From IMG/VR virus record IMGVR_UViG_3300042473_001265, positions 62,001 through 126,000 of that record: a DNA stretch of 64,000 bases; one strand, given 5' to 3'. The translations under genes were made by a program, and so were the position numbers. Position 1 is the stretch's first letter; each line of letters begins with the position of its first letter. Under the pieces are notes generated by a model. The model made no database searches and was not told the DNA's origin. It was given only the letters and a program-made list of their open reading frames with translations. Shown in pieces: positions 38,899 through 53,767 of the stretch.

Positions 38899-38927
38899 TT
38901 GACACAGATTGCTGACTGTGCTACAAT
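38899..38927 (+). promoter_or_regulatory. sigma70-type promoter of tRNA block 1
   Basis: TTGACA-N17-TACAAT. Confidence 0.75.
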
Positions 38928-38936
38928 AGACAATTG

Positions 38937-38984
38937 GCAACAAACGATCGAGTAGTTGCTGTACAGTTCATTAATATAAAATTT
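38937..38984 (+). promoter_or_regulatory. boxB-like hairpin plus boxA-like antitermination element
   Basis: GCAAC-AAACGATCGAGTA-GTTGC, then GTTCATTAATATAAAATTT; the same loop recurs at 42764. Confidence 0.5.
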
Positions 38985-39005
38985 AGATAAGTTAATACAA
39001 GCAAT

Positions 39006-39095
39006 GGAAGCGTGGCAGAGTCCGGTTTATTGCAGCAGTCTTGAAAACTGCCGGCTCGAAAGGGTCCGTGAGTTCGAATCTCACCGCTTCCACCA
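39006..39095 (+). tRNA. tRNA-Ser(TGA)
   Basis: Cloverleaf with long variable arm, loop CTTGAAA, encoded CCA. Confidence 0.95.
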
Positions 39096-39104
39096 ATGCA
39101 ATTT

Positions 39105-39179
39105 GCGGCCATAGTATAACGGATAATACAGCGGTCTTCTACACCGTGAATGTGGGTTCGATTCCTGCTGGCCGCGCCA
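39105..39179 (+). tRNA. tRNA-Arg(TCT)
   Basis: Loop CTTCTAC, T-loop GGTTCGATTCC, CCA. Confidence 0.93.
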
Positions 39180-39184
39180 AACAT

Positions 39185-39270
39185 GCCCCCATAGACAAAT
39201 TGGTAAAGTCACTCTCCTCAAAAGGGAGTATTTTAAAAAAATCTGAGTTCGAATCTCAGTGGGGGCACCA
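39185..39270 (+). tRNA. tRNA-Leu(CAA)
   Basis: Loop CTCAAAA, AT-rich variable arm, CCA. Confidence 0.9.
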
Positions 39271-39311
39271 ATGGTTGACAAAGATCAACAAACAAGTTAT
39301 AATAGAACAAT

Positions 39312-39398
39312 GCTCTGATGGTGAAATAGGTAGACACAAGAGACTTAAAATCTCTCGCTCGCAAGGGTGTGCCGGTTCGATTCCGGCTCGGAGCACCA
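39312..39398 (+). tRNA. tRNA-Leu(TAA)
   Basis: Loop CTTAAAA, long variable arm, CCA. Confidence 0.95.
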
Positions 39399-39441
39399 TT
39401 TAAATAAGTCAGTTAATCAAGTTAAATTAAAGAAAGCAATC

Positions 39442-39615
39442 ATGACCCCAACAAAAACTTTTAAGTTCAGCAAGCGCAACAAAACATTGATGACCTTGCT
39501 GCCATTCAAAGATCAAACCATACGCAATGCGTTCAAGCGCATGATGGTTGATGCACAGCTATGCAGCGGTGTTGTTGTCAAAAGCAGCAAGGATCGTGGC
39601 ACAGATAGCAAGTAA
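39442..39615 (+). CDS. small basic hypothetical protein within the tRNA block
   Basis: 57-aa ORF MTPTKTFKFSKRNK... between two Leu tRNAs. Confidence 0.55.
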   Translation: MTPTKTFKFSKRNKTLMTLLPFKDQTIRNAFKRMMVDAQLCSGVVVKSSKDRGTDSK

Positions 39616-39623
39616 AGATATAT

Positions 39624-39700
39624 GCCCTGGTGGTGAAATTGGTAGACACAGCGGTCTTAGAAGCCGTAAGCTGAGAGTTCGAGTCTCTCCTAGGGCACCA
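39624..39700 (+). tRNA. tRNA-Leu(TAG)
   Basis: Loop CTTAGAA, short variable arm, CCA. Confidence 0.9.
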
Positions 39701-39722
39701 AGTATATAAAAGCAATCACACT

Positions 39723-40196
39723 ATGCCAAAATGTTATCAACTGATCGGAGTGCCTGCATCGGGCAAAACCACTTGGTACCGTAACCAAGAGTGGTTGGGT
39801 GAAGATAAAAAAGATCACAAGTATGTGTCCACAGATCAGCATGTGGAAGGATATGCCAATGATCAAGGCAAAACCTACAGTGAAGTGTTTGAGGAATACA
39901 TGCCCACTGCTGTCAAACAGATGCTGATAAATGTTAACATGGCTGCGGCATATCAGTTAGATATTGTTTGGGATCAGACCAGCACCACAGTTAAAAGCCG
40001 TCGAAAGAAGTTTGTTGAGTTGCCCAACTATGAGCACATTGCTGTGGTATTTCGGACACCCGATGCACCGGAACATGCTCGCAGATTAAACAGTCGTCCG
40101 GGCAAGCACATTCCTGATGAAATAGTACAAGATATGATCATCAAATTTGAAATGCCTACCGAAGAAGAAGGGTTTGTTGAAATCTGGCATGTGTAA
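39723..40196 (+). CDS. P-loop kinase (AAA_33 / polynucleotide-kinase-like)
   Basis: LIGVPASGKTT and IVWDQTS..R motifs. Confidence 0.85.
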   Translation: MPKCYQLIGVPASGKTTWYRNQEWLGEDKKDHKYVSTDQHVEGYANDQGKTYSEVFEEYMPTAVKQMLINVNMAAAYQLDIVWDQTSTTVKSRRKKFVELPNYEHIAVVFRTPDAPEHARRLNSRPGKHIPDEIVQDMIIKFEMPTEEEGFVEIWHV

Positions 40197-40203
40197 TACT
40201 GGG

Positions 40204-40689
40204 TTAGGCTCTGGATAGCATTACCAGGCTGAGAAAAAATGCCGGAATTGCAATGGCCACAAAACAAGAAAACACAAGAAATGTTTGTAATATGTCTTCT
40301 TGTGCTTTGCGATTGGCTGCTGCCATTTTTCTTTCAACTTCTGCTCGTTCTTTGTACATACGCACTCGCTCGGACTGCATTTGATCCCAGACATCTTTGT
40401 TGCCGGACCAGATCAGCATTTCTTTAAGTTCTTTTTCAGCGTCCCGCAGTGCTTTGCTGTGCATGGCAGTTTGCAAAGATCTTGAAGCAATTTCTCCATT
40501 GCTCAGCAAAGAAGTAGAATTCATCAGCTTGACATTGGCCACATAAACTTTGTCGCAATTTTGAAAAAATGAACTAAACTGTCCGTATAAGCTGTTGATG
40601 TCTTTGCCCATGGCAATGGCTTTTTTAATGCCGCCAATTGCTTGCTGTGCCGCAGTGAATGCCAGGCCAATTGTCACAGGGTCAATCAT
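40204..40689 (-). CDS. hypothetical protein with hydrophobic termini
   Basis: 161-aa ORF MIDPVTIGLAF..., coupled to 40686-40880. Confidence 0.6.
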   Translation of the reverse strand: MIDPVTIGLAFTAAQQAIGGIKKAIAMGKDINSLYGQFSSFFQNCDKVYVANVKLMNSTSLLSNGEIASRSLQTAMHSKALRDAEKELKEMLIWSGNKDVWDQMQSERVRMYKERAEVERKMAAANRKAQEDILQTFLVFSCFVAIAIPAFFLSLVMLSRA

Positions 40690-40880
40690 GATCGTAGAAT
40701 ATAAGGTTTAAATTGCTTTTCCCAGCGTCGACACCAAACTTCTCTATTGGGAGCTTGGCCCGACCAACTCCACAGTGTACACACCCATTGTTCATTCTTG
40801 TCTAATTTTTCCGTTGGTGGTGCCACAGCATTTAATGCTGTAGAGCCTGCCAACAACACAAACAACAAAGAATATTTCAT
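40686..40880 (-). CDS. small secreted hypothetical protein
   Basis: Signal-peptide-like N-terminus and a WVCTLWSW..WCRRW motif. Confidence 0.55.
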   Translation of the reverse strand: MKYSLLFVLLAGSTALNAVAPPTEKLDKNEQWVCTLWSWSGQAPNREVWCRRWEKQFKPYILRS

Positions 40881-40926
40881 TTACTATATTTAACTATAGT
40901 ACGATATAATTACAACAGCCGTTTGA

Positions 40927-40955
40927 TTGACTGCAAAGCCACAATCTGCTATAAT
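40927..40955 (+). promoter_or_regulatory. sigma70-type promoter
   Basis: TTGACT-N17-TATAAT before the phosphoesterase gene. Confidence 0.7.
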
Positions 40956-40986
40956 ATAGGTTACAACGCAAGAAAAGGAGGGCAAG

Positions 40987-41589
40987 ATGCCTAGTGTATT
41001 TTTAGTCAGCGACACGCACTTTGGACACATGGGTGTATGCCGCTTTACCCGCAACGATGGTGTCACCAAATTACGCCCGTGGGATAGTGCTGAGGAAATG
41101 GACGAAGCCATGGTCACGGCCTGGAACAAACGAGTTAAACCCACGGACAAGGTATATCACTTGGGTGATGTGGTTATAAACCGCAAAGCATTAAAGACTC
41201 TGGCCAGATTGAACGGCGACAAGGTGTTAATCCGTGGCAACCATGATATCTTCCGTGATGAAGAGTATCGTGAATACTTTCGTGAATTACGGGCGTACCA
41301 TGTGATGAACGGCATGATCCTTAGCCACATTCCTGTACACAGTGACAGCTTGGGGCGTTTTGGCGTCAACATACACGGACATACTCACGCAAATCGTGTA
41401 CGCAAAGCCCGTGGAGTTGATGCTAGAACTGGTGAAATCTTGTACAGCGACGAGATTGATCCACGCTATCATTGTGTATGCGTGGAACAGACTGACTTTG
41501 CACCGATACTGTTTGAAGATGTGATCAAACGCATCGAAGCAGAAGGTGGGTCAGTGGGTTTTCGTAACGGCAATGGTCCTACAATGTAG
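40987..41589 (+). CDS. calcineurin-like metallophosphoesterase
   Basis: SDTHFGH, HLGDVV, IRGNHD, LSHIP and HGHTH motifs. Confidence 0.92.
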   Translation: MPSVFLVSDTHFGHMGVCRFTRNDGVTKLRPWDSAEEMDEAMVTAWNKRVKPTDKVYHLGDVVINRKALKTLARLNGDKVLIRGNHDIFRDEEYREYFRELRAYHVMNGMILSHIPVHSDSLGRFGVNIHGHTHANRVRKARGVDARTGEILYSDEIDPRYHCVCVEQTDFAPILFEDVIKRIEAEGGSVGFRNGNGPTM

Positions 41590-41604
41590 GCCTGGAATTT
41601 TAAA

Positions 41605-41682
41605 GTAGCGGTGGCAGAGAGGCCCAATGCAAGGGATTGCAAATCCCTAAAACCGTGAGTTCGAATCTCACCCGCTACTCCA
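41605..41682 (+). tRNA. tRNA-Cys(GCA)
   Basis: Loop TTGCAAA, U73, CCA. Confidence 0.93.
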
Positions 41683-41803
41683 GTTAATTCACAGTTGAAT
41701 TTTAAAGAGTAAATAGAGTAGTCAGAGTGCAGGCTCTTTTTAAATCCTGCCTTTGTGTGGTACCGAGCAATGCTCCTGCTTGTATAAGCATCGGTACACT
41801 ATT

Positions 41804-41877
41804 GCGGGATTCGTAAAATGGTATTACCTTAGATTTCCAATCTAAAGTCGGGGGTTCGATTCCCCCATCCCGCTCCA
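41804..41877 (+). tRNA. tRNA-Gly(TCC)
   Basis: Loop TTTCCAA, U73, CCA. Confidence 0.93.
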
Positions 41878-41906
41878 GTTTTTATGTTGATCGATTTGAG
41901 AAAATT

Positions 41907-42407
41907 ATGCAAACCATTAATCTTGTAAAAGTAAAACAATTCATAGAAGCACAAGGCCCAATGACTCGCATCTATTTGGGTTGCGACAGCGAACGAATCC
42001 GAATCAACAACGAATGGTGGGCCGATTACACACTGGCCATTGTGGTGCATATCAACGGCAACAGCGGATGCAAGATATTTGGCGAAGTGTGCCGCGAGCG
42101 TGACTATGATCAAAAAACTGCACGGCCCAGCATGCGACTGATGAACGAAGTGTACAAAGTTTCTGACATGTATCATCGGCTGGGCGAAGTGCTGAACGGC
42201 CGAGAAGTGGAAGTACACTTGGACATCAATCCAGACGAACGCCACGGATCCAGCTGTGTGATTGCACAGGCCATTGGCTATATAAAAGGAACCTGCAACA
42301 TAACACCATTGGTCAAACCCGAAGCGTTTGCTGCCAGTTATGCTGCGGATCGCTTCAAAGGATTGGCCACTGCACGACATCGTGTTCGAGTCAATGAACG
42401 AGTTTAG
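41907..42407 (+). CDS. RNase H-like YkuK/DUF458 family protein
   Basis: IYLGCDS, RLMNEVYK, EVHLDIN and AASYAAD pattern. Confidence 0.75.
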   Translation: MQTINLVKVKQFIEAQGPMTRIYLGCDSERIRINNEWWADYTLAIVVHINGNSGCKIFGEVCRERDYDQKTARPSMRLMNEVYKVSDMYHRLGEVLNGREVEVHLDINPDERHGSSCVIAQAIGYIKGTCNITPLVKPEAFAASYAADRFKGLATARHRVRVNERV

Positions 42408-42494
42408 GAAGTGTGGCTGAGTGGCCTAAGGCAGCTGATTACTAATCAGTCATATCGCAAGGTATCGTGGGTTCGAATCCTACCACTTCCGCCA
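42407..42494 (+). tRNA. tRNA-Ser with the rare anticodon ACT
   Basis: Ser-type long variable arm and G73; stem GCTGA/TCAGT with loop TTACTAA; CCA. Confidence 0.85.
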
Positions 42495-42500
42495 ATGTTA

Positions 42501-42526
42501 AAAAGGCTACTTTGATAGCCTTTTTT
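42501..42526 (+). terminator. intrinsic terminator after tRNA-Ser(ACT)
   Basis: AAAAGGCTA-ctttga-TAGCCTTTTTT. Confidence 0.7.
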
Positions 42527-42561
42527 CTTGACTTTTAAACAAAAGGCATATATAATACACT

Positions 42562-42660
42562 ATGATTACGCAAATCACATTCACTGCTAACAACACGCCG
42601 GCCATCTATGAGATAGCCTATGAGCGTGATTGTCCCAGGGGTCTTTGCCATTGTAGTTAA
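42562..42660 (+). CDS. leader peptide 2 (32 aa) of a putative tRNA-operon attenuator
   Basis: MITQITFTANNTPAIYEIAYERDCPRGLCHCS; TATAAT at 42549 suggests a near-leaderless start. Confidence 0.7.
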   Translation: MITQITFTANNTPAIYEIAYERDCPRGLCHCS

Positions 42661-42682
42661 CAAAAGTACTACATTCACAAAG

Positions 42683-42707
42683 ACCCGCTAACTAGGCGGG
42701 TTTTTTT
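42683..42707 (+). terminator. attenuator terminator 2
   Basis: ACCCGC-taactag-GCGGGT plus T6; GGGTCTTTG (42639) pairs perfectly with CAAAGACCC (42678), which overlaps the stem. Confidence 0.8.
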
Positions 42708-42717
42708 ATGGCGCTGG

Positions 42718-42746
42718 TAGACACAAAATCGCATCAGTGCTATAAT
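42718..42746 (+). promoter_or_regulatory. sigma70-type promoter of tRNA block 2
   Basis: TAGACA-N17-TATAAT. Confidence 0.65.
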
Positions 42747-42760
42747 ACACACATAACAGC

Positions 42761-42801
42761 AGCAAACGATCGAGTAGCTGAAGAGAATTCTTTAAAAATT
42801 T
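42761..42801 (+). promoter_or_regulatory. boxB-like hairpin plus boxA-like element
   Basis: AGC-AAACGATCGAGTA-GCT, then TTCTTTAAAAATTT resembling rrn boxA (TGCTCTTTAACAATTT). Confidence 0.55.
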
Positions 42802-42830
42802 ACTAATATTTTTTCTTGCTACGGCAAGAA

Positions 42831-42964
42831 ATTATATTGAAACACATTTTCAATCTGAATTGACAGATACAAACAACCAAGGGGAGCCGCTGGACTTGAG
42901 CCAGGTTCATCCTGAATTGACAGGAACAAGGTTGTAAGGGGAGCCGAGTGCGTTTCAATATAAT
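42831..42964 (+). ncRNA. inverted-repeat-bounded RNA cassette with an internal direct repeat
   Basis: ATTATATTGAAACAC...GCGTTTCAATATAAT arms; two CTGAATTGACAG...AAGGGGAGCCG units inside. Confidence 0.55.
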
Positions 42965-42970
42965 AAATTT

Positions 42971-43045
42971 GGAGCATTCGTCTATCGGTTAGGACAGTGG
43001 GTTTTCAGTCCACTAAGAGCGGTTCGACTCCGCTATGCTCTACCA
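42971..43045 (+). tRNA. tRNA-Glu(TTC)
   Basis: Loop TTTTCAG, CCA. Confidence 0.92.
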
Positions 43046-43052
43046 TGTTTTT

Positions 43053-43139
43053 GGATGTGTAGGAAAATTGGTAACCCCAGGAGACTGTAAATCTTCCGTC
43101 GTAATGGCATTGTTGGTTCAAGTCCAACCTCATCCACCA
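43053..43139 (+). tRNA. tRNA-Tyr(GTA)
   Basis: Loop CTGTAAA, variable arm, CCA. Confidence 0.93.
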
Positions 43140-43142
43140 AAT

Positions 43143-43370
43143 ATTTCTCGTCAGAGCCCTAATGCAAATCCTGTGGGCGATGAATTAACAAGGCTGCATA
43201 GATGCTTGCAGTATATTGTCGGTGAAGTTCCGACCGGGAAACGAAATCAAGTGGAAAGCAAGAGCCACAAAGTAAACACCGCCGGGTCAGAAAATGTGTC
43301 CGGGACGTATGGGTCGCGCAGCCTATACAAACAACGGTGGGGTAAGAGTCCTCATAACATTTTCACAAAT
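43143..43370 (+). ncRNA. unidentified multi-hairpin RNA candidate
   Basis: Hairpins GCCC/GGGC, CTGCA/TGCAG, GTCGG/CCGAC, GTGG/CCAC and CACCG/CGGTG between two tRNAs. Confidence 0.4.
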
Positions 43371-43373
43371 TTA

Positions 43374-43448
43374 GGTGCGTTCATATAACGGTCATTATCC
43401 TGGATTGTCTATCCAGAGACGGGAGTTCGACTCTCCCACGCATCGCCA
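43374..43448 (+). tRNA. tRNA-Asp(GTC)
   Basis: Loop TTGTCTA, G73, CCA. Confidence 0.92.
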
Positions 43449-43456
43449 AGTTAACA

Positions 43457-43533
43457 GGCCCTTAGCTCATGTTGGTTAGAGCAGCAGACTCATAATCTGT
43501 TGGTGCTGTGTTCGACTCACAGAGGGCCTACCA
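43457..43533 (+). tRNA. tRNA(CAT), probably Ile2 (lysidine type)
   Basis: Loop CTCATAA; GGCCCTT acceptor resembles E. coli ileX. Confidence 0.8.
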
Positions 43534-43539
43534 AGTTTT

Positions 43540-43712
43540 GGTTAGTTGGAAATGAAAGTAACCCAAAGGGAGCGCTCTGAACAGGCGCTGCTTAGTACGC
43601 CTTACAAAAGTAATTGTCCTGACTGTTCGACCCAAGAGGTGTTTACCCGTAGATTAAGTTCCTACGCTCTCGCTCAAGGGATGTCGCTGTGTCGCAACAG
43701 CACTAACCACCA
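43540..43712 (+). ncRNA. 173-nt RNA with a tRNA-like acceptor stem, T-like arm and ACCA end
   Basis: GGTTAGT/ACTAACC 7-bp stem plus A-CCA; GCTGT-gtcgca-ACAGC hairpin directly before the 3' strand. Confidence 0.5.
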
Positions 43713-43777
43713 AGTTTAAGAGTTCGTCTAGAAACCGGTAAATTGTAGTTTGGTCTACAAGCTCTTAATTAGTTTAT

Positions 43778-43870
43778 GGTGTCATAGGATGTAACGGGGT
43801 GCGGTTTGCCTCAACCTTGAATGATCATCAAGGTTTTCTTGCGTGGGTTCGAATCCCACATGATGCCCCA
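43778..43870 (+). tRNA. atypical tRNA-like RNA with a non-canonical core
   Basis: GGTGTCA/TGATGCC acceptor, canonical T arm GTGGG-TTCGAAT-CCCAC and CCA; central 8-bp AACCTTGA/TCAAGGTT hairpin. Confidence 0.55.
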
Positions 43871-43941
43871 AATTTGCAGTTTTTGTCTGGAGTAATATTC
43901 CTGGACACGGATAAAAACAGAAATGTTCTGCGCCAAGTTAT

Positions 43942-44011
43942 GCCCTGGACTGTGTTGCGAGTCAGATTTGAAGCTGAACGTAGACAGGTTTAATTCCTGT
44001 TAGGGGCGCCA
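43942..44011 (+). tRNA. degenerate tRNA with a reduced D arm, identity unclear
   Basis: T arm ACAGG-TTTAATT-CCTGT, GCCA end, imperfect acceptor and anticodon arms. Confidence 0.4.
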
Positions 44012-44014
44012 AGT

Positions 44015-44238
44015 TTTGTTAGAGTGTTAGCAAGAGAAAGTCACGCTGTCTAGGTTTCTTCGAAGGACCAAAACAGTAGAAGGTTGCGGGTTCGATGCCC
44101 GGCTGATCGCTTGAGTGGGATCGGCATACATGACGGCGTATCAACTGGACCGGTATCCCAAGTAACTTACCGACTCCCGCTCGAGCTTGTTAATTCGGGT
44201 GAATGGCAGCAATAACGTGGTGCTGCTACTCTAACAAA
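44015..44238 (+). ncRNA. 224-nt structured RNA candidate closed by an 11-bp stem
   Basis: TTTGTTAGAGT/ACTCTAACAAA; internal hairpins and a T-loop-like GGGTTCGATGCCC. Confidence 0.45.
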
Positions 44239-44246
44239 TTCAATAT

Positions 44247-44336
44247 GCCAGCGAGACTTGGAGTCCGAGGGGTCTTATATGCCCTTTCCGCCAGATTAGC
44301 GGCTTTGAGAGAGTTCGATTCTCTCCGCTGGTACCA
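44247..44336 (+). tRNA. tRNA with anticodon TAT (nominal Ile), long variable arm and minimal D loop
   Basis: GCCAGCG/CGCTGGT-A-CCA; loop CTTATAT; CCGC/GCGG variable arm; D arm GACT-tgg-AGTC. Confidence 0.75.
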
Positions 44337-44378: not shown

Positions 44379-44407
44379 TTGACAAGCAAAGATGTTTGTC
44401 ATACAAT
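44379..44407 (+). promoter_or_regulatory. sigma70-type promoter with a palindromic spacer
   Basis: TTGACA-N17-TACAAT; TGACAAGCA/TGTTTGTCA inverted repeat. Confidence 0.7.
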
Positions 44408-44420
44408 AGATACTTACTTG

Positions 44421-44526
44421 ATATTGTTGAGCACATTAGCCTGACTGAAACGGGCATCGAGTACGTGGGGCGTGAAAGAAGGTTCGATTCCTTCATACTC
44501 AATTTCAGTGGTGTGTTCAACAATAT
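44421..44526 (+). ncRNA. inverted-repeat-bounded RNA cassette with a T-arm-like hairpin
   Basis: ATATTGTTGAGCACATT...GGTGTGTTCAACAATAT; internal GAAGG-TTCGATT-CCTTC. Confidence 0.55.
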
Positions 44527-44547
44527 AAAGTTTGGTAAAATTAGGTG

Positions 44548-44576
44548 TTGACAAGTTCAACAGTTGATGTTACAAT
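44548..44576 (+). promoter_or_regulatory. sigma70-type promoter of the large ncRNA
   Basis: TTGACA-N17-TACAAT. Confidence 0.75.
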
Positions 44577-44582
44577 AAGATT

Positions 44583-45476
44583 CCGGGGCAGTTTAATGTC
44601 CTACTAGGCAGCTTGCTGTCTAGTGAAGAATAACTGTGGTGACACAGCCAAAGGAGGTATGCCTACATAACTCCGCCAGCAACGGTTCGTTTAGACAAGC
44701 CTGCTCAGACTCGCGAGAGTCCCTTCACTGATAAGACCGGTGGAGGTAACAATGACGCTGGATGTTGTGGAAAGAACGTCGGCTTACCGGCCCGCAAGGG
44801 TAACCGGAGCAGATGGAAAGTAACAGGTGGTGCTGACTTCACAACAAAACCAGTCCAGTTAATTGGCATGAGAAAGGGTAGTGTATCGGTCCGAGGGGTT
44901 GCACCCAAGGGCTTGTATGCAGTTTGAGTGGTCAGTGGAGGCTGTCGAAAGGCGGGGTCAACACAGATCGCAAAAGACGTCTGAGTAGTTCGCAAGACAA
45001 AAGGAACGTGGTGTGTTGTATTGTGTAGAGCAAAACTTTATGCAGCAACTGAGTCAGCACATCGCAGTAGGTTCGTTATAGCTCAATTGGTAGAGCAACT
45101 CCCTGTTAAGGAGTAGGCAGACGGTTCAAATCCATCTAACTATTAAAAAGCAAAGACTGACTCGGTCGTATGTGAAAAGCATCTAATACTTGGCTCGCAA
45201 GAGAATCAAGTCAGACGTAACTCGCAAGGTGAAATCTGTTTATGCAGGAAGTTTCGTAACTGTTTAGCGACAGTGAATGGCTCTAAAGGTCAACGGGATA
45301 GAAAGCGTAGAATAGCATATGGCGACAAGACTACTGCCTGTCTTTAAAAACGGCGATGCTGGCAACAGACCAGGAAACCTGCAAGGGTCTTGGTGGAAGT
45401 CGGAAGAAAGCGGTCTCGCAAGGATCGTAATAATGTCCGAGGTGTTGTTGGGTAAGCATGTATTCTCAGTGCTCCA
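44583..45476 (+). ncRNA. large (about 0.9 kb) structured RNA, GOLLD-like
   Basis: No credible ORF; own promoter; many GCAA/GAAA tetraloop hairpins; tRNA-array location. The GAGTAG..GCAAG..AAAGGAACGTGGTGTGTTGTATT segment resembles GOLLD as I recall it. Confidence 0.6.
45072..45144 (+). pseudogene. degenerate tRNA-Asn(GTT) embedded in the large ncRNA
   Basis: D arm TAGCTCAATTGGTAGAGC, ACTCC-CTGTTAA-GGAGT and T-loop GGTTCAAATCC; broken acceptor stem, no CCA. Confidence 0.65.
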
Positions 45477-52445: not shown

Positions 52446-53767
52446 TAGAGTTACTGTATCTATTACCAATCATACTGCTTGGCATAGCCAGCGGCATTGT
52501 GATCGGCGTATTTCCCGGAGTAGGACCTGCATCAGGAATAATGATCTTGTATCCTGTTTTGCTCGGGTTGCCGGTGGTGGATTTGTTTGTATTTTATTCA
52601 GTGATGATGTCTTCAGTGCAGTACTACAGCAGCATACCATCTATTGTGTATGGCATAGCCGGAGAAATCACCAGTGTGCCAGCGGTGCAGTATGGCCATG
52701 ATGAATTCAGGCAAGGGCGTGGTGCAGAACTACTAAGCGCCACGGCCACATCCAGTCTGATAGCATCGGTTGTGGGTGTTGTGATTTTTTATGCAGCCAC
52801 ACAGTACATTGATTTTATGAAGTACTTTATCAACAACACTCCAAGATTGATATTGTTAACTGTGCTTGTTGTGTTGATCAGTGTGGCCAGCAAACAAAAG
52901 ATCCTGGCACTGACATTTGCAATTATAGGACTGACGATTGGACACATTGGGTACGATGTTTTGAGGCGCGAACATTTTTTATCCGCAGCAGATTTTCTGC
53001 CCAGTGGCATTCCGTTTGTACCGGTGTTCATTGGATTTCTAATGTTGCCAGAGTTATTTCATCATGCAAGGCATACCTTATCCGGTGTTGACATCAATTC
53101 GAATGAGTTTGGTATTCGTACTCGGCTAGCAAATTTATTAAAATTTCCACCGGTGCTGTCATCCCTGCGTGGATCCGTGATAGGTGCTGTGATGGGCCTG
53201 GTGCCTATGATAGGAACATCTGTGTCGTCAATGGTTGCAGCAGTGGTGGAAAAAAAGATCAACAACAACAATCAACGAATAGTGGTTTCTGCAGAGGCTG
53301 CCAACAATTCAGCTGCCATCACTGTGTTGATACCATTGATATTTCTAGCATTGCCTATTATTCCATCCGAAGCAGTGATCATGGCCTTGGCCGAACGCAG
53401 CGGATTTGGAATCAACAACAGTTTCAATTTGATAGCATCACTGGCTGGACCATTGATTGTGATACTGTTACTGGTCAATGTGGTCAATTGGTTGGTTGCC
53501 GGAATGTTTTATCAAAGTATGATTTCCCTCTACATTCGGTTGAACAAGATAATTTATCCCATCCTGATTGCAGTAAGCGTGGCAGTGTGTGTTTCAGAAG
53601 GAATGGCCAACCACCAACTGGGTCTGTATCTGTTGTTGACTGCCATGTCGGTATGTGTTGGGGTTTTTGTCAAAGAGTTTTCTGTTCGCGTCGCACTGAT
53701 ATTTGGCATGCTTTTGTCAACGTCAGTATCATCGGAAATTTTCCGATTTGTATTATTCAACTTTTAA
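52442..53767 (+). CDS. TctA-like tripartite tricarboxylate transporter membrane subunit
   Basis: About 12 TM segments; GVFPGVGP, GEITSVPA and AEAANNSAA..LIPLIFLALP motifs. Confidence 0.8.
   Translation: MIELLYLLPIILLGIASGIVIGVFPGVGPASGIMILYPVLLGLPVVDLFVFYSVMMSSVQYYSSIPSIVYGIAGEITSVPAVQYGHDEFRQGRGAELLSATATSSLIASVVGVVIFYAATQYIDFMKYFINNTPRLILLTVLVVLISVASKQKILALTFAIIGLTIGHIGYDVLRREHFLSAADFLPSGIPFVPVFIGFLMLPELFHHARHTLSGVDINSNEFGIRTRLANLLKFPPVLSSLRGSVIGAVMGLVPMIGTSVSSMVAAVVEKKINNNNQRIVVSAEAANNSAAITVLIPLIFLALPIIPSEAVIMALAERSGFGINNSFNLIASLAGPLIVILLLVNVVNWLVAGMFYQSMISLYIRLNKIIYPILIAVSVAVCVSEGMANHQLGLYLLLTAMSVCVGVFVKEFSVRVALIFGMLLSTSVSSEIFRFVLFNF

What the first reader, a model, noticed from the sequence alone, without database searches (positions are those of the whole stretch)
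38937..42801. rrn-like boxB-boxA antitermination signals at the heads of two tRNA transcripts
Seen: shortly after the promoters at 38899 and 42718 there is a hairpin with the identical 13-nt loop AAACGATCGAGTA but different stems (38937-38959, 42761-42779). Each is followed by a boxA-like run: GTTCATTAATATAAAATTT (38966) and TTCTTTAAAAATTT (42788). A variant, AAACGGGCATCGAGTA, follows the promoter at 44379. Established: rRNA operons use boxB-boxA with NusB/E/A/G/SuhB for processive antitermination. Inference: the phage recruits host Nus factors, or its own N-like protein, to transcribe the long structured arrays.
Basis: partly seen in the sequence, partly recalled or inferred. Interest (0 to 1): 0.62.

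Follow-up and report, generated by a model that had tools for sequence, protein, structure and literature searches.

The report
rrn-like boxA leaders on phage tRNA operons
Two strong promoters of a 340-kb freshwater jumbo phage start their untranslated tRNA/ncRNA operons with a small hairpin followed by a near-copy of boxA, the signal bacteria use to make ribosomal-RNA transcription termination-proof, and relatives carry the exact bacterial signal at the same place, so the phage probably borrows the host Nus antitermination machinery for its tRNA arrays.

Summary
After sigma-70 promoters at 38899 and 42718 lie hairpins (38936-38960, 42760-42780) with the identical loop AAACGATCGAGTA. Six bases further lie GTTCATTAATA and ATTCTTTAAAA, each 10/11 to the published boxA consensus GYTCTTTAANA. 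The third "variant" (44447) is not homologous; it folds into a different, tRNA-like structure.

Comparative data support the boxA reading. The same leader heads tRNA arrays in at least six related IMG/VR contigs, and one stem pair covaries (G-C/A-U). In 80 protein-anchored loci of the wider phage family, exact boxA occurs 23 times on the sense strand against 2 antisense. It mostly follows promoter-plus-hairpin and precedes 7-27 tRNAs. One relative (L105) has the loop with one change plus a perfect GCTCTTTAACA. The layout matches the E. coli rrnB P2 leader, and the extended 15-mer marks rrn leaders and spacers in sampled Pseudomonadota.

No NusB, NusG or Q homologue was found in the phage, so host Nus factors are the likely partners. 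The conserved 13-nt loop is unexplained; it is not copied from any representative bacterial genome. Function is inferred, not shown. I rate it a new member of a known kind, confidence about 0.6.

The parts
38899..38927 (+). Promoter P1: TTGACA-17 nt-TACAAT with TG-extended -10. The inferred start is near 38934.
   Evidence: scan (11/12). Conserved in relatives L035/L093.
38936..38960 (+). Leader hairpin 1 of P1: stem GCAAC/GUUGC (38937-41 with 38955-59, plus a possible G-U), 13-nt loop AAACGAUCGAGUA (38942-38954). It is the positional counterpart of rrn boxB.
   Evidence: The stem pair covaries G-C/A-U across relatives.
38966..38986 (+). boxA-like GUUCAUUAAUA (38966-38976; 10/11 to GYTCTTTAANA, mismatch at position 5), followed by an A/U-rich AAAAUUUAG flank.
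   Evidence: It is GCTCATTAATA in the relative L093. Unpaired in the centroid fold.
39006..39700 (+). Cargo of P1: tRNA-Ser(tga), Arg(tct), Leu(caa), then an internal promoter at 39275 without boxA, Leu(taa), a small ORF and Leu(tag).
42684..42707 (+). Terminator-like hairpin CCCGC-taactag-GCGGG followed by T7, just upstream of P2. It makes P2 an independent unit.
   Evidence: Read directly.
42718..42746 (+). Promoter P2: TAGACA-17 nt-TATAAT with TG-extended -10. The inferred start is near 42753.
   Evidence: 11/12. Relatives have TTGACA here.
42760..42780 (+). Leader hairpin 1 of P2: stem CAGC/GCUG, with the same 13-nt loop (42764-42776).
42787..42801 (+). boxA-like AUUCUUUAAAA (42787-42797; 10/11, mismatch at position 1) plus AUUU. 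It matches 14 of 15 bases of the rrn-associated word GTTCTTTAAAAATTT.
   Evidence: Unpaired in the centroid fold.
42813..42830 (+). Hairpin 2 (UUCUUGC-uacg-GCAAGAA) followed by UUAUAUUG. It looks like a terminator but has a weak U tract.
   Evidence: Relatives have larger, different hairpins at this place.
42831..42964 (+). Long-range helix (42831-42849 with 42946-42964) enclosing a roughly 95-nt structured domain with two CUGAAUUGACAG...AAGGGGAGCCG units. It ends 7 nt before tRNA-Glu.
   Evidence: z = -3.6. The helix is kept through compensatory changes in relatives (ATATTGAAACA / ATATAAAAATG / ATATGCAAAC with matching 3' strands).
42971..44336 (+). First cargo of P2: tRNA-Glu, Tyr, Asp, Met, Ile(tat), interleaved with unannotated structured spacers. 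The mostly untranslated stretch continues through GOLLD and further tRNAs to the tmRNA terminator at 49717-49740.

Best explanation
P1 and P2 are host-RNA-polymerase (sigma-70) promoters of untranslated tRNA/ncRNA operons. The first 45 nt or so of each transcript is an rrn-type antitermination leader. It has a 5'-proximal hairpin at the position of rrn boxB and, 6 nt later, a single-stranded boxA-like word.

Inferred mechanism: host NusB-S10(NusE) binds the boxA RNA as it emerges. Together with NusA, NusG and SuhB it stays tethered to the polymerase. That makes elongation resistant to Rho (and perhaps faster, and helpful for RNA folding) across kilobases of RNA that no ribosome protects.

The hairpin's 13-nt loop is conserved in this sub-lineage, where boxA is slightly off consensus. 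It probably adds a second contact, with a host or phage factor, or protects the 5' end. That part is the least certain.

Shown: the sequence elements, their positions, their conservation and the covariation. Inferred: Nus binding and antitermination.
For: 1. Anatomy: strong promoters, then a hairpin 9-13 nt after the -10, then 6 nt, then an 11-mer matching GYTCTTTAANA at 10/11. The consensus is from PMC5725501.
2. This is the layout of E. coli rrnB P2: TATTAT, 11 nt, GCCGC[14-nt loop]GCGGC, 3 nt, GCTCTTTAACAATTT.
3. Among 54 strong + strand promoters of the genome, only P1 and P2 have a boxA-like word at this offset.
4. The same leader heads tRNA arrays in related contigs L014, L015, L019, L022, L032 and L035. 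T3, C4, T6, T7, A8, A9 and A11 of boxA are invariant in the nine leaders of A2.
5. Stem pair 4 switches G-C to A-U in at least two contexts, and G-U occurs at the base.
6. L105 has the loop with one change and a perfect GCTCTTTAACA, followed at once by a tRNA.
7. In 80 protein-anchored family loci (1.24 Mb), exact boxA occurs 23 times on the + strand and 2 on the - strand. GTTCTTTAAAA occurs 15 times against 0.5 for permuted words. Exact boxA follows 15 of 245 promoters that have a tRNA within 400 nt, against 3 of 592 others (Fisher p = 2e-6; the loci are related, so this overstates independence).
8. These leaders use several unrelated hairpins, many with GAAA loops, 2-8 nt before boxA. Each is followed by 7-27 tRNAs within 5 kb.
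9. GYTCTTTAANAATTT is multi-copy in 74 of 401 sampled Pseudomonadota genomes, and the reversed control is rare. Six of six loci checked by Rfam lie in rrn operons, in 16S leaders or 16S-23S spacers. Five of 30 listed loci have a 16S start within 175 nt by signature; several single-copy hits are not rrn.
10. The phage has no NusB or NusG of its own, while its many sigma-70 promoters point to the host polymerase.
11. Precedent: boxA is already known to serve other long non-coding arrays, namely CRISPR arrays (Stringer et al. 2020, as described in PMC7862264; PMC13753749).
Against: - The window's two boxA words are not perfect (G1 to A; T5 to A), and T5 lies in the U-rich core. Whether NusB-S10 of the unknown host binds them is untested.
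- The host is unknown; a Gram-negative, possibly Burkholderiales-like host is only hinted at by porin, TctA and a two-piece tmRNA.
- Genome-wide, boxA-like words with one mismatch or fewer show no strand bias in this genome (26 + / 33 -). The case therefore rests on position and conservation.
- The hairpins are weak.
- Many internal tRNA promoters lack boxA.
- Loop invariance among the first relatives is partly by construction, because they were found with the 15-mer. Positional homologues in L093 and L106 carry other loops.
- Metatranscriptome contigs gave no coverage of the leaders and no 5' ends.
- tRNA-rich cultured phages T5, KVP40, RaK2, PBECO4 and Phosso show no boxA enrichment, so this is not a general phage strategy.
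Confidence: 0.6

Rival explanations
1. Lambda-nut-like system: the conserved 13-nt loop is the binding site of a phage-encoded N-like RNA-binding antiterminator. The weakened boxA only assists it, so antitermination is phage-controlled rather than constitutive.
For: - The loop is far more conserved than its surroundings within the sub-lineage.
- It is absent from representative bacterial genomes in this context.
- In the family, the 13-nt-loop type goes with off-consensus boxA words, whereas GAAA-loop hairpins go with perfect boxA. This parallels lambda, whose suboptimal boxA needs N-boxB (textbook knowledge).
Against: - The order is hairpin then boxA, as in rrn and not as in nut.
- The loop is not a GNRA-like pentaloop.
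- No candidate protein was identified, and N-like peptides cannot be found by family search.
- L105 combines the loop with a perfect boxA.
- Loop invariance is partly an ascertainment effect.
Confidence: 0.15
2. 5'-end stabiliser or processing signal: the hairpin merely protects the primary transcript from 5'-end-dependent decay, or marks an RNase cleavage that releases the first tRNA. The A/U-rich run is an RNase E site that resembles boxA only by composition.
For: - The hairpin sits within about 5 nt of the inferred 5' end.
- The leaders are A/U-rich.
- RNA contigs cover downstream tRNAs and ncRNA but not the leaders. This is weak evidence, since these are contigs only.
Against: - Composition does not explain it: GTTCTTTAAAA occurs 15 times against 0.5 for permuted words, with strong strand bias.
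- Relatives carry the exact 11-15-nt rrn word.
- A stabiliser hairpin would not need a conserved loop.
Confidence: 0.12
3. DNA-level element: an operator for a phage regulator, or a sigma-70-dependent promoter-proximal pause site (the loop contains AACGAT, the pause-inducing -10-like word of lambda PR' as I recall it) that loads a Q-like factor.
For: - AACGAT lies at about +10 to +18 of both transcripts.
- The inverted repeat could bind a dimer.
Against: - No Q-family protein was found.
- The two half-sites differ between P1 and P2 in one genome but change together, and G-U occurs. This fits RNA pairing better than protein-DNA half-sites.
- The inner CGATCG palindrome is off-centre by half a base from the stem dyad and is broken in L105.
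- Positional homologues with other hairpins have no such word.
Confidence: 0.05
4. No function: a remnant of a duplicated promoter cassette. The left arm and loop start (CAGCAAAC) resemble the common early-gene leader ...ACACATAAACAGCAAACAGGAG of this genome.
For: Dozens of early promoters share TATAAT-atacacataaacagcaaacaggag. P2 reads TATAAT-acacacataacagcagcaaacgatcg.
Against: - P1 and P2 have diverged everywhere except the hairpin and the boxA core.
- Both types persist in relatives whose flanks have diverged.
- The stem covaries.
- The family-wide association of boxA with tRNA operons is not explained.
Confidence: 0.05

Closest known systems
Bacterial rrn leader antitermination signal (boxB-boxA-boxC; NusB/NusE/NusA/NusG/SuhB/S4 complex)
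   Same: - A promoter-proximal 5-bp hairpin with a 13-14-nt loop, a short spacer, an 11-nt boxA word and then AUUU.
- It heads a long untranslated, highly structured, multi-gene RNA operon.
- Relatives have the exact rrn word.
- A long-range helix follows boxA, as the leader-trailer helix does in rrn.
   Different: - It is viral and heads tRNA/ncRNA arrays, not rRNA.
- The window's boxA words miss the consensus at one position.
- No boxC was recognised.
- The hairpin loop is sequence-conserved in this sub-lineage. By my recollection of the literature, rrn boxB is not conserved and is dispensable.
boxA upstream of CRISPR arrays and of suhB (Nus targets outside rRNA)
   Same: boxA is placed at the head of a long non-coding repeat array, or of a gene, to counter Rho (PMC5725501; PMC7862264; PMC13753749).
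   Different: Those are chromosomal. No conserved preceding hairpin is described for them, and here the cargo is tRNAs and large ncRNAs of a phage.
Lambda nutL/nutR (boxA-boxB with N protein)
   Same: A phage leader RNA that uses boxA and a hairpin to recruit host Nus factors. An off-consensus boxA is paired with a conserved hairpin.
   Different: - The order is reversed here (hairpin first).
- The loop is 13 nt, not a GNRA-like pentaloop.
- No N-like gene is evident.
- The cargo is non-coding.
HK022 put RNA and lambda Q/PR' pause
   Same: Promoter-proximal cis elements that make the polymerase termination-resistant.
   Different: put is a two-stem element of about 70 nt with no boxA. Q needs a Q protein and a DNA binding element. 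Neither was found here.

Membership tests
rrn-type boxA (Nus-factor) antitermination leader | An 11-nt boxA word matching GYTCTTTAANA in the transcript | tested here: inconclusive
   The window has 10/11 at both sites. The core T3 C4 T6 T7 A8 A9 A11 is invariant in the nine leaders of A2. Exact matches occur at the homologous position in relatives L105, L104, L095-L103, L131, L133, L165 and L170.
rrn-type boxA (Nus-factor) antitermination leader | Located in the 5' leader, shortly downstream of the promoter and upstream of a long untranslated RNA | tested here: met
   The words lie 38-40 nt after the -10. tRNA arrays follow. No credible ORF occurs for about 2.9 kb after P2.
rrn-type boxA (Nus-factor) antitermination leader | A preceding small hairpin (boxB position) and single-stranded boxA | tested here: met
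   Compared with E. coli rrnB P2.
rrn-type boxA (Nus-factor) antitermination leader | boxC element after boxA | not tested
   By eye, no UGUGUGGG-like word appears. No formal search was made.
rrn-type boxA (Nus-factor) antitermination leader | Binding of NusB-S10, and Nus- and boxA-dependent read-through of Rho terminators | not testable with these tools
   This needs biochemistry or genetics. The RNA runs held are contigs without ends.
Lambda-type nut site (N-dependent) | Order boxA then boxB, with boxB a 5-bp stem and a GNRA-like pentaloop | tested here: not met
   The hairpin precedes boxA and its loop is 13 nt.
Lambda-type nut site (N-dependent) | Phage-encoded arginine-rich N protein | not tested
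   No dependable profile exists for such peptides. Only NusB, NusG and Q families were searched.
Q-type antitermination (sigma-dependent pause plus Q) | Q-family protein encoded by the phage | tested here: not met
   PF06530 and PF03589 gave no match in the 98%-complete genome.

The most novel reading that the evidence does not exclude
The invariant 13-nt loop is the docking site of an as yet unrecognised phage (or host) RNA-binding factor. That factor would compensate for a deliberately weakened boxA. This jumbo-phage lineage would then run a switchable, N/nut-like antitermination and RNA-chaperoning system dedicated to non-coding RNA factories (tRNA arrays, GOLLD, tmRNA). It could also act as a decoy that draws NusB-S10 away from host rrn operons.
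Probability: 0.15. Interest if true: 0.75.

Novelty: new member of a known kind. Interest (0 to 1): 0.55.

Why it matters
Long phage tRNA arrays are untranslated and should be exposed to Rho, yet how they are transcribed processively has hardly been asked. In the held paper library I found no description of boxA at phage tRNA operons.

If it holds, a large family of freshwater jumbo phages has taken over the host's ribosomal-RNA antitermination signal for its own tRNA/ncRNA operons. The same region includes a GOLLD RNA. That would extend the known targets of the Nus complex (rRNA, suhB, CRISPR arrays, lambdoid nut) to viral non-coding operons.

It would also offer a simple sequence marker for operon heads in uncultured phage genomes. 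In addition, it provides a natural series of hairpin-boxA variants for studying what the boxB position contributes.

Tried and rejected
- Host mimicry of the whole leader: the scan of 185,579 species genomes for loop + YTCNTTAA gave 8 hits, all in unrelated contexts without hairpin or promoter. The hairpin is therefore not copied from a representative rrn leader.
- Third site: rejected as a homologue.
- A second viral scan with the boxA flank GAATTCYTTAAAAATTTA found no leaders with other loops, only coding-sequence chance hits.
- Host identification through the phage's TctA gene over 401 Pseudomonadota genomes gave only about 30% identity matches in anonymous genomes and was abandoned.
- RNA evidence: two freshwater metatranscriptomes hold small parts. 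Exact contigs cover 41793-42147 and 42870-43063, but no leader coverage or ends were seen. This is uninformative, and DNA carry-over cannot be excluded.
- Phage NusG, NusB and Q families: none found.
- Generality in cultured tRNA-rich phages (T5, KVP40, RaK2, PBECO4, Phosso): boxA counts equal the controls, and the T5 hit in the tRNA region is antisense.
- Kissing-loop or Dam-site ideas based on CGATCG/GATC: weakened by L105, whose loop reads GATAG.
- Pseudoknot between the loop and downstream sequence: no conserved complement was seen.
- Rfam has nothing at the leaders.
- Not used: the large protein searches, structure prediction and any other genetic code.

Full report
**Setting.** The window is bases 62001-126000 of a 340,172-bp IMG/VR virus record, estimated 98% complete, 44.6% G+C. 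It has no close relative among GenBank phages. Positions 38.9-49.8 kb hold 30 tRNA genes, a two-piece tmRNA and a GOLLD RNA. Twelve near-consensus sigma-70 promoters lie on the + strand of the scanned 36-52 kb stretch.

**Observation.** P1 (TTGACA-17-TACAAT, 38899-38927) and P2 (TAGACA-17-TATAAT, 42718-42746) are each followed by a small hairpin whose 13-nt loop AAACGATCGAGTA is identical (38942-38954; 42764-42776).
- These are the only exact copies in the genome. One- and two-mismatch copies are as frequent as for the reversed control.
- The stems are GCAAC/GTTGC and CAGC/GCTG.
- Six bases after each hairpin lie GTTCATTAATA (38966) and ATTCTTTAAAA (42787).
- The published gamma-proteobacterial boxA consensus is GYTCTTTAANA (PMC5725501). 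Both words match 10 of 11 positions.
- Of 54 strong + strand promoters in the genome, only these two carry such a word at this offset.

**The third site.** It is real sequence but a different thing. It lies 40 nt after its -10, has no boxA-like run, is not found by the covariance model, and is base-paired inside a 110-nt long-stem, T-arm-bearing fold.

**Relatives with the same loop.**
- A scan of IMG/VR for the shared 15-mer returned, besides chance hits in coding sequence, the same promoter-hairpin-boxA leader in several diverged contigs. L014, L015, L019, L022 and L032 are P2-like. L035 is P1-like.
- In each contig with enough flank, the leader stands at the head of a tRNA array, for example 36 tRNAs on the locus downstream of it in L022.
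- Across the nine leaders of A2, boxA positions T3, C4, T6, T7, A8, A9 and A11 never vary. With the stem bases, the hairpin is the most conserved block, while the -10-to-hairpin spacer and everything after boxA drift.
- One stem pair alternates G-C and A-U in P1-type, L022 and L105 contexts, and G-U occurs at the stem base. This favours RNA pairing.
- Caveat: these relatives were ascertained with the loop itself.
- Independent ascertainment through the boxA flank found no loop variants.
- Ascertainment through a neighbouring protein found L105, whose loop has one change (AAACGATAGAGTA). It also found positional homologues with other loops in L093 and L106.

**The wider family is the key result.** The RNase-H-like ORF 41907-42407 was used as an anchor to fetch 80 loci (1.24 Mb) of related jumbo phages.
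- Exact GYTCTTTAANA occurs 23 times on the sense strand and twice on the other.
- GTTCTTTAAAA alone occurs 15 times, against 0.5 for permuted words.
- Seventeen of the 23 follow a TTGACA/TATAAT-like promoter.
- Most of the promoter-proximal ones are preceded at 2-8 nt by a short hairpin of varying sequence: CTAGTTAG-gaaa-TTAACTAG, GATTGA-gaaa-TCAATC, TGTTAA-gaaa-TTAACA, or GCAAC with 13- or 17-nt loops.
- Exact boxA follows 15 of 245 promoters that have a tRNA within 400 nt, but 3 of 592 other promoters (Fisher p = 2e-6; the loci are related, so this overstates independence).
- Every such leader with enough downstream flank is followed by 7-27 tRNAs in the next 5 kb.
- L105 has a perfect GCTCTTTAACA, and L104 has GTTCTTTAACA.

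**Comparison with bacteria.**
- The E. coli rrnB P2 leader, read from NC_000913.3, is TATTAT, 11 nt, GCCGC[14-nt loop]GCGGC, act, GCTCTTTAACAATTTATCAG. This is the same architecture, down to the AUUU after boxA.
- The 15-mer GYTCTTTAANAATTT occurs in 74 of 401 evenly sampled Pseudomonadota genomes, typically in several copies, while the reversed control is rare.
- Six of six loci checked by Rfam lie in rrn operons, either 75-175 nt before 16S or in the 16S-23S spacer after the spacer tRNAs. Five of the 30 listed loci have a 16S start within 175 nt by signature; several single-copy hits are not rrn.
- GTTCTTTAAAAATTT, the commonest phage-family form, is the spacer boxA of two small-genome bacteria in the sample (L180, L181). 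P2 matches it at 14 of 15 positions.
- The full phage leader (loop plus boxA-like word) is not present in 185,579 representative bacterial genomes beyond chance.

**Mechanism.** The phage lacks NusB, NusG and Q-family genes and relies on many sigma-70 promoters.
- The most economical reading is that host NusB-S10 binds the boxA-like RNA and builds the rrn-type antitermination complex on host polymerase. That would protect kilobases of untranslated RNA from Rho.
- From P2 there is no credible ORF for about 2.9 kb. Apart from the weak leader hairpin 2, there is no strong intrinsic terminator until 49717.
- boxA is predicted to be unpaired.
- After boxA, P2-type leaders have a hairpin and then an 18-bp long-range helix enclosing a variable structured insert, ending just before the first tRNA. 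The helix is kept by compensatory changes among relatives. This recalls the rrn leader-trailer helix, whose formation the Nus complex is proposed to assist (title and abstract of PMC10250234).
- Precedents for boxA outside rRNA are suhB and CRISPR arrays.

**What remains open.** Nus binding and read-through are not shown.
- The window's boxA words are each one step from consensus, and the host is unknown.
- The conserved 13-nt loop has no explanation. In the family it goes with off-consensus boxA words, except in L105. That invites, but does not establish, a lambda-like auxiliary factor.
- DNA-level readings (operator, sigma-dependent pause via AACGAT) are disfavoured by the covariation, the off-centre inner palindrome, its loss in L105 and the absence of Q.
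- Five cultured tRNA-rich phages show no boxA enrichment, so the device appears lineage-specific.
- Searches of the held literature found no report of boxA at phage tRNA operons. The library is incomplete, and Stringer et al. 2020 could not be read.

**Verdict.** Observation partly confirmed and interpretation partly supported. This is a new member of a known kind, a boxA/Nus leader in a viral tRNA-operon context. Confidence is about 0.6 and interest 0.55.

Noticed in passing
window 44548-45472: GOLLD RNA (Rfam RF02032, 197 bits, 45008-45472) with tRNA-Asn (45071-45145) embedded in it. It probably starts at the promoter at 44548 (TTGACA-17-TACAAT). It sits inside the same largely untranslated region as the P2 operon. 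A weak DNA match to Sinorhizobium phage Phosso covers this element.
   Followed up: partly
window 42831-42964: An unannotated structured RNA is bounded by an 18-bp long-range helix and contains two CUGAAUUGACAG...AAGGGGAGCCG units. Relatives keep the helix (with compensatory changes) but carry different inserts of about 100-250 nt. It looks like a processing stalk that releases a variable small RNA just before the first tRNA. No Rfam match.
   Followed up: partly
window 44414-44530: Behind the promoter at 44379 lies a 110-nt long-stem RNA (z = -4.0) with an internal T-arm-like GAAGGUUCGAUUCCUUC. It is tRNA-like but was not called by ARAGORN or Rfam.
   Followed up: partly
window 43140-43370, 43540-44240: The spacers between tRNAs are long, ORF-free and hold tRNA-like pieces. 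Examples are an 8-bp-acceptor tRNA-like sequence at about 43790-43870 and a T-arm at about 44085-44101. There is also a 90-nt tRNA-Ile(tat) with an odd anticodon position (44247-44336). These may be unusual tRNAs or further ncRNAs.
   Followed up: no
window 49362-49767: Phage-encoded two-piece (permuted) tmRNA (RF04321, 89 bits; beta_tmRNA 67 bits, below its threshold) with an unusually long tag, ANANTGEVTVSGKNVKFSARTAQRHSLAV. The relative L014 has the ordinary tag ANDNTFALAA.
   Followed up: no
whole genome (G000), e.g. genome positions 14026, 119816, 336220: Dozens of early-gene promoters form a repeated cassette, TTGACC-17-TATAAT-atacacataaacagcaaacaggag-N5-ATG. P2's initial transcribed sequence (acacacataacagcagcaaac) looks derived from it.
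   Followed up: partly
window 39723-40196, 40987-41589, 41907-42407: Protein genes are embedded in the tRNA region: an AAA_33 P-loop kinase, a calcineurin-like phosphoesterase (together reminiscent of polynucleotide kinase/phosphatase RNA repair) and an RNaseH_like (PF04308) protein. The last is conserved across the whole phage family.
   Followed up: partly
window 50186-51088, 52442-53767: Host-like genes: a Gram-negative porin (Porin_4, E = 4e-26) and a TctA tricarboxylate transporter subunit (E = 4e-50). They hint at a Gram-negative, possibly Burkholderiales-type, freshwater host.
   Followed up: partly
window 42407-42494: ARAGORN calls a tRNA-Ser with anticodon ACT, which is unusual. It lies just before two terminator-like hairpins (42500-42525, 42684-42707).
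   Followed up: no
L149, L153, L156, L157, L158, L164, L167 (family loci): A recurrent TTGAAA-17-TATAAT followed after one base by ATTCTTTAACA, with no tRNA downstream. Here the boxA-like word would straddle the transcription start, so it is probably not an RNA signal. Unexplained.
   Followed up: no
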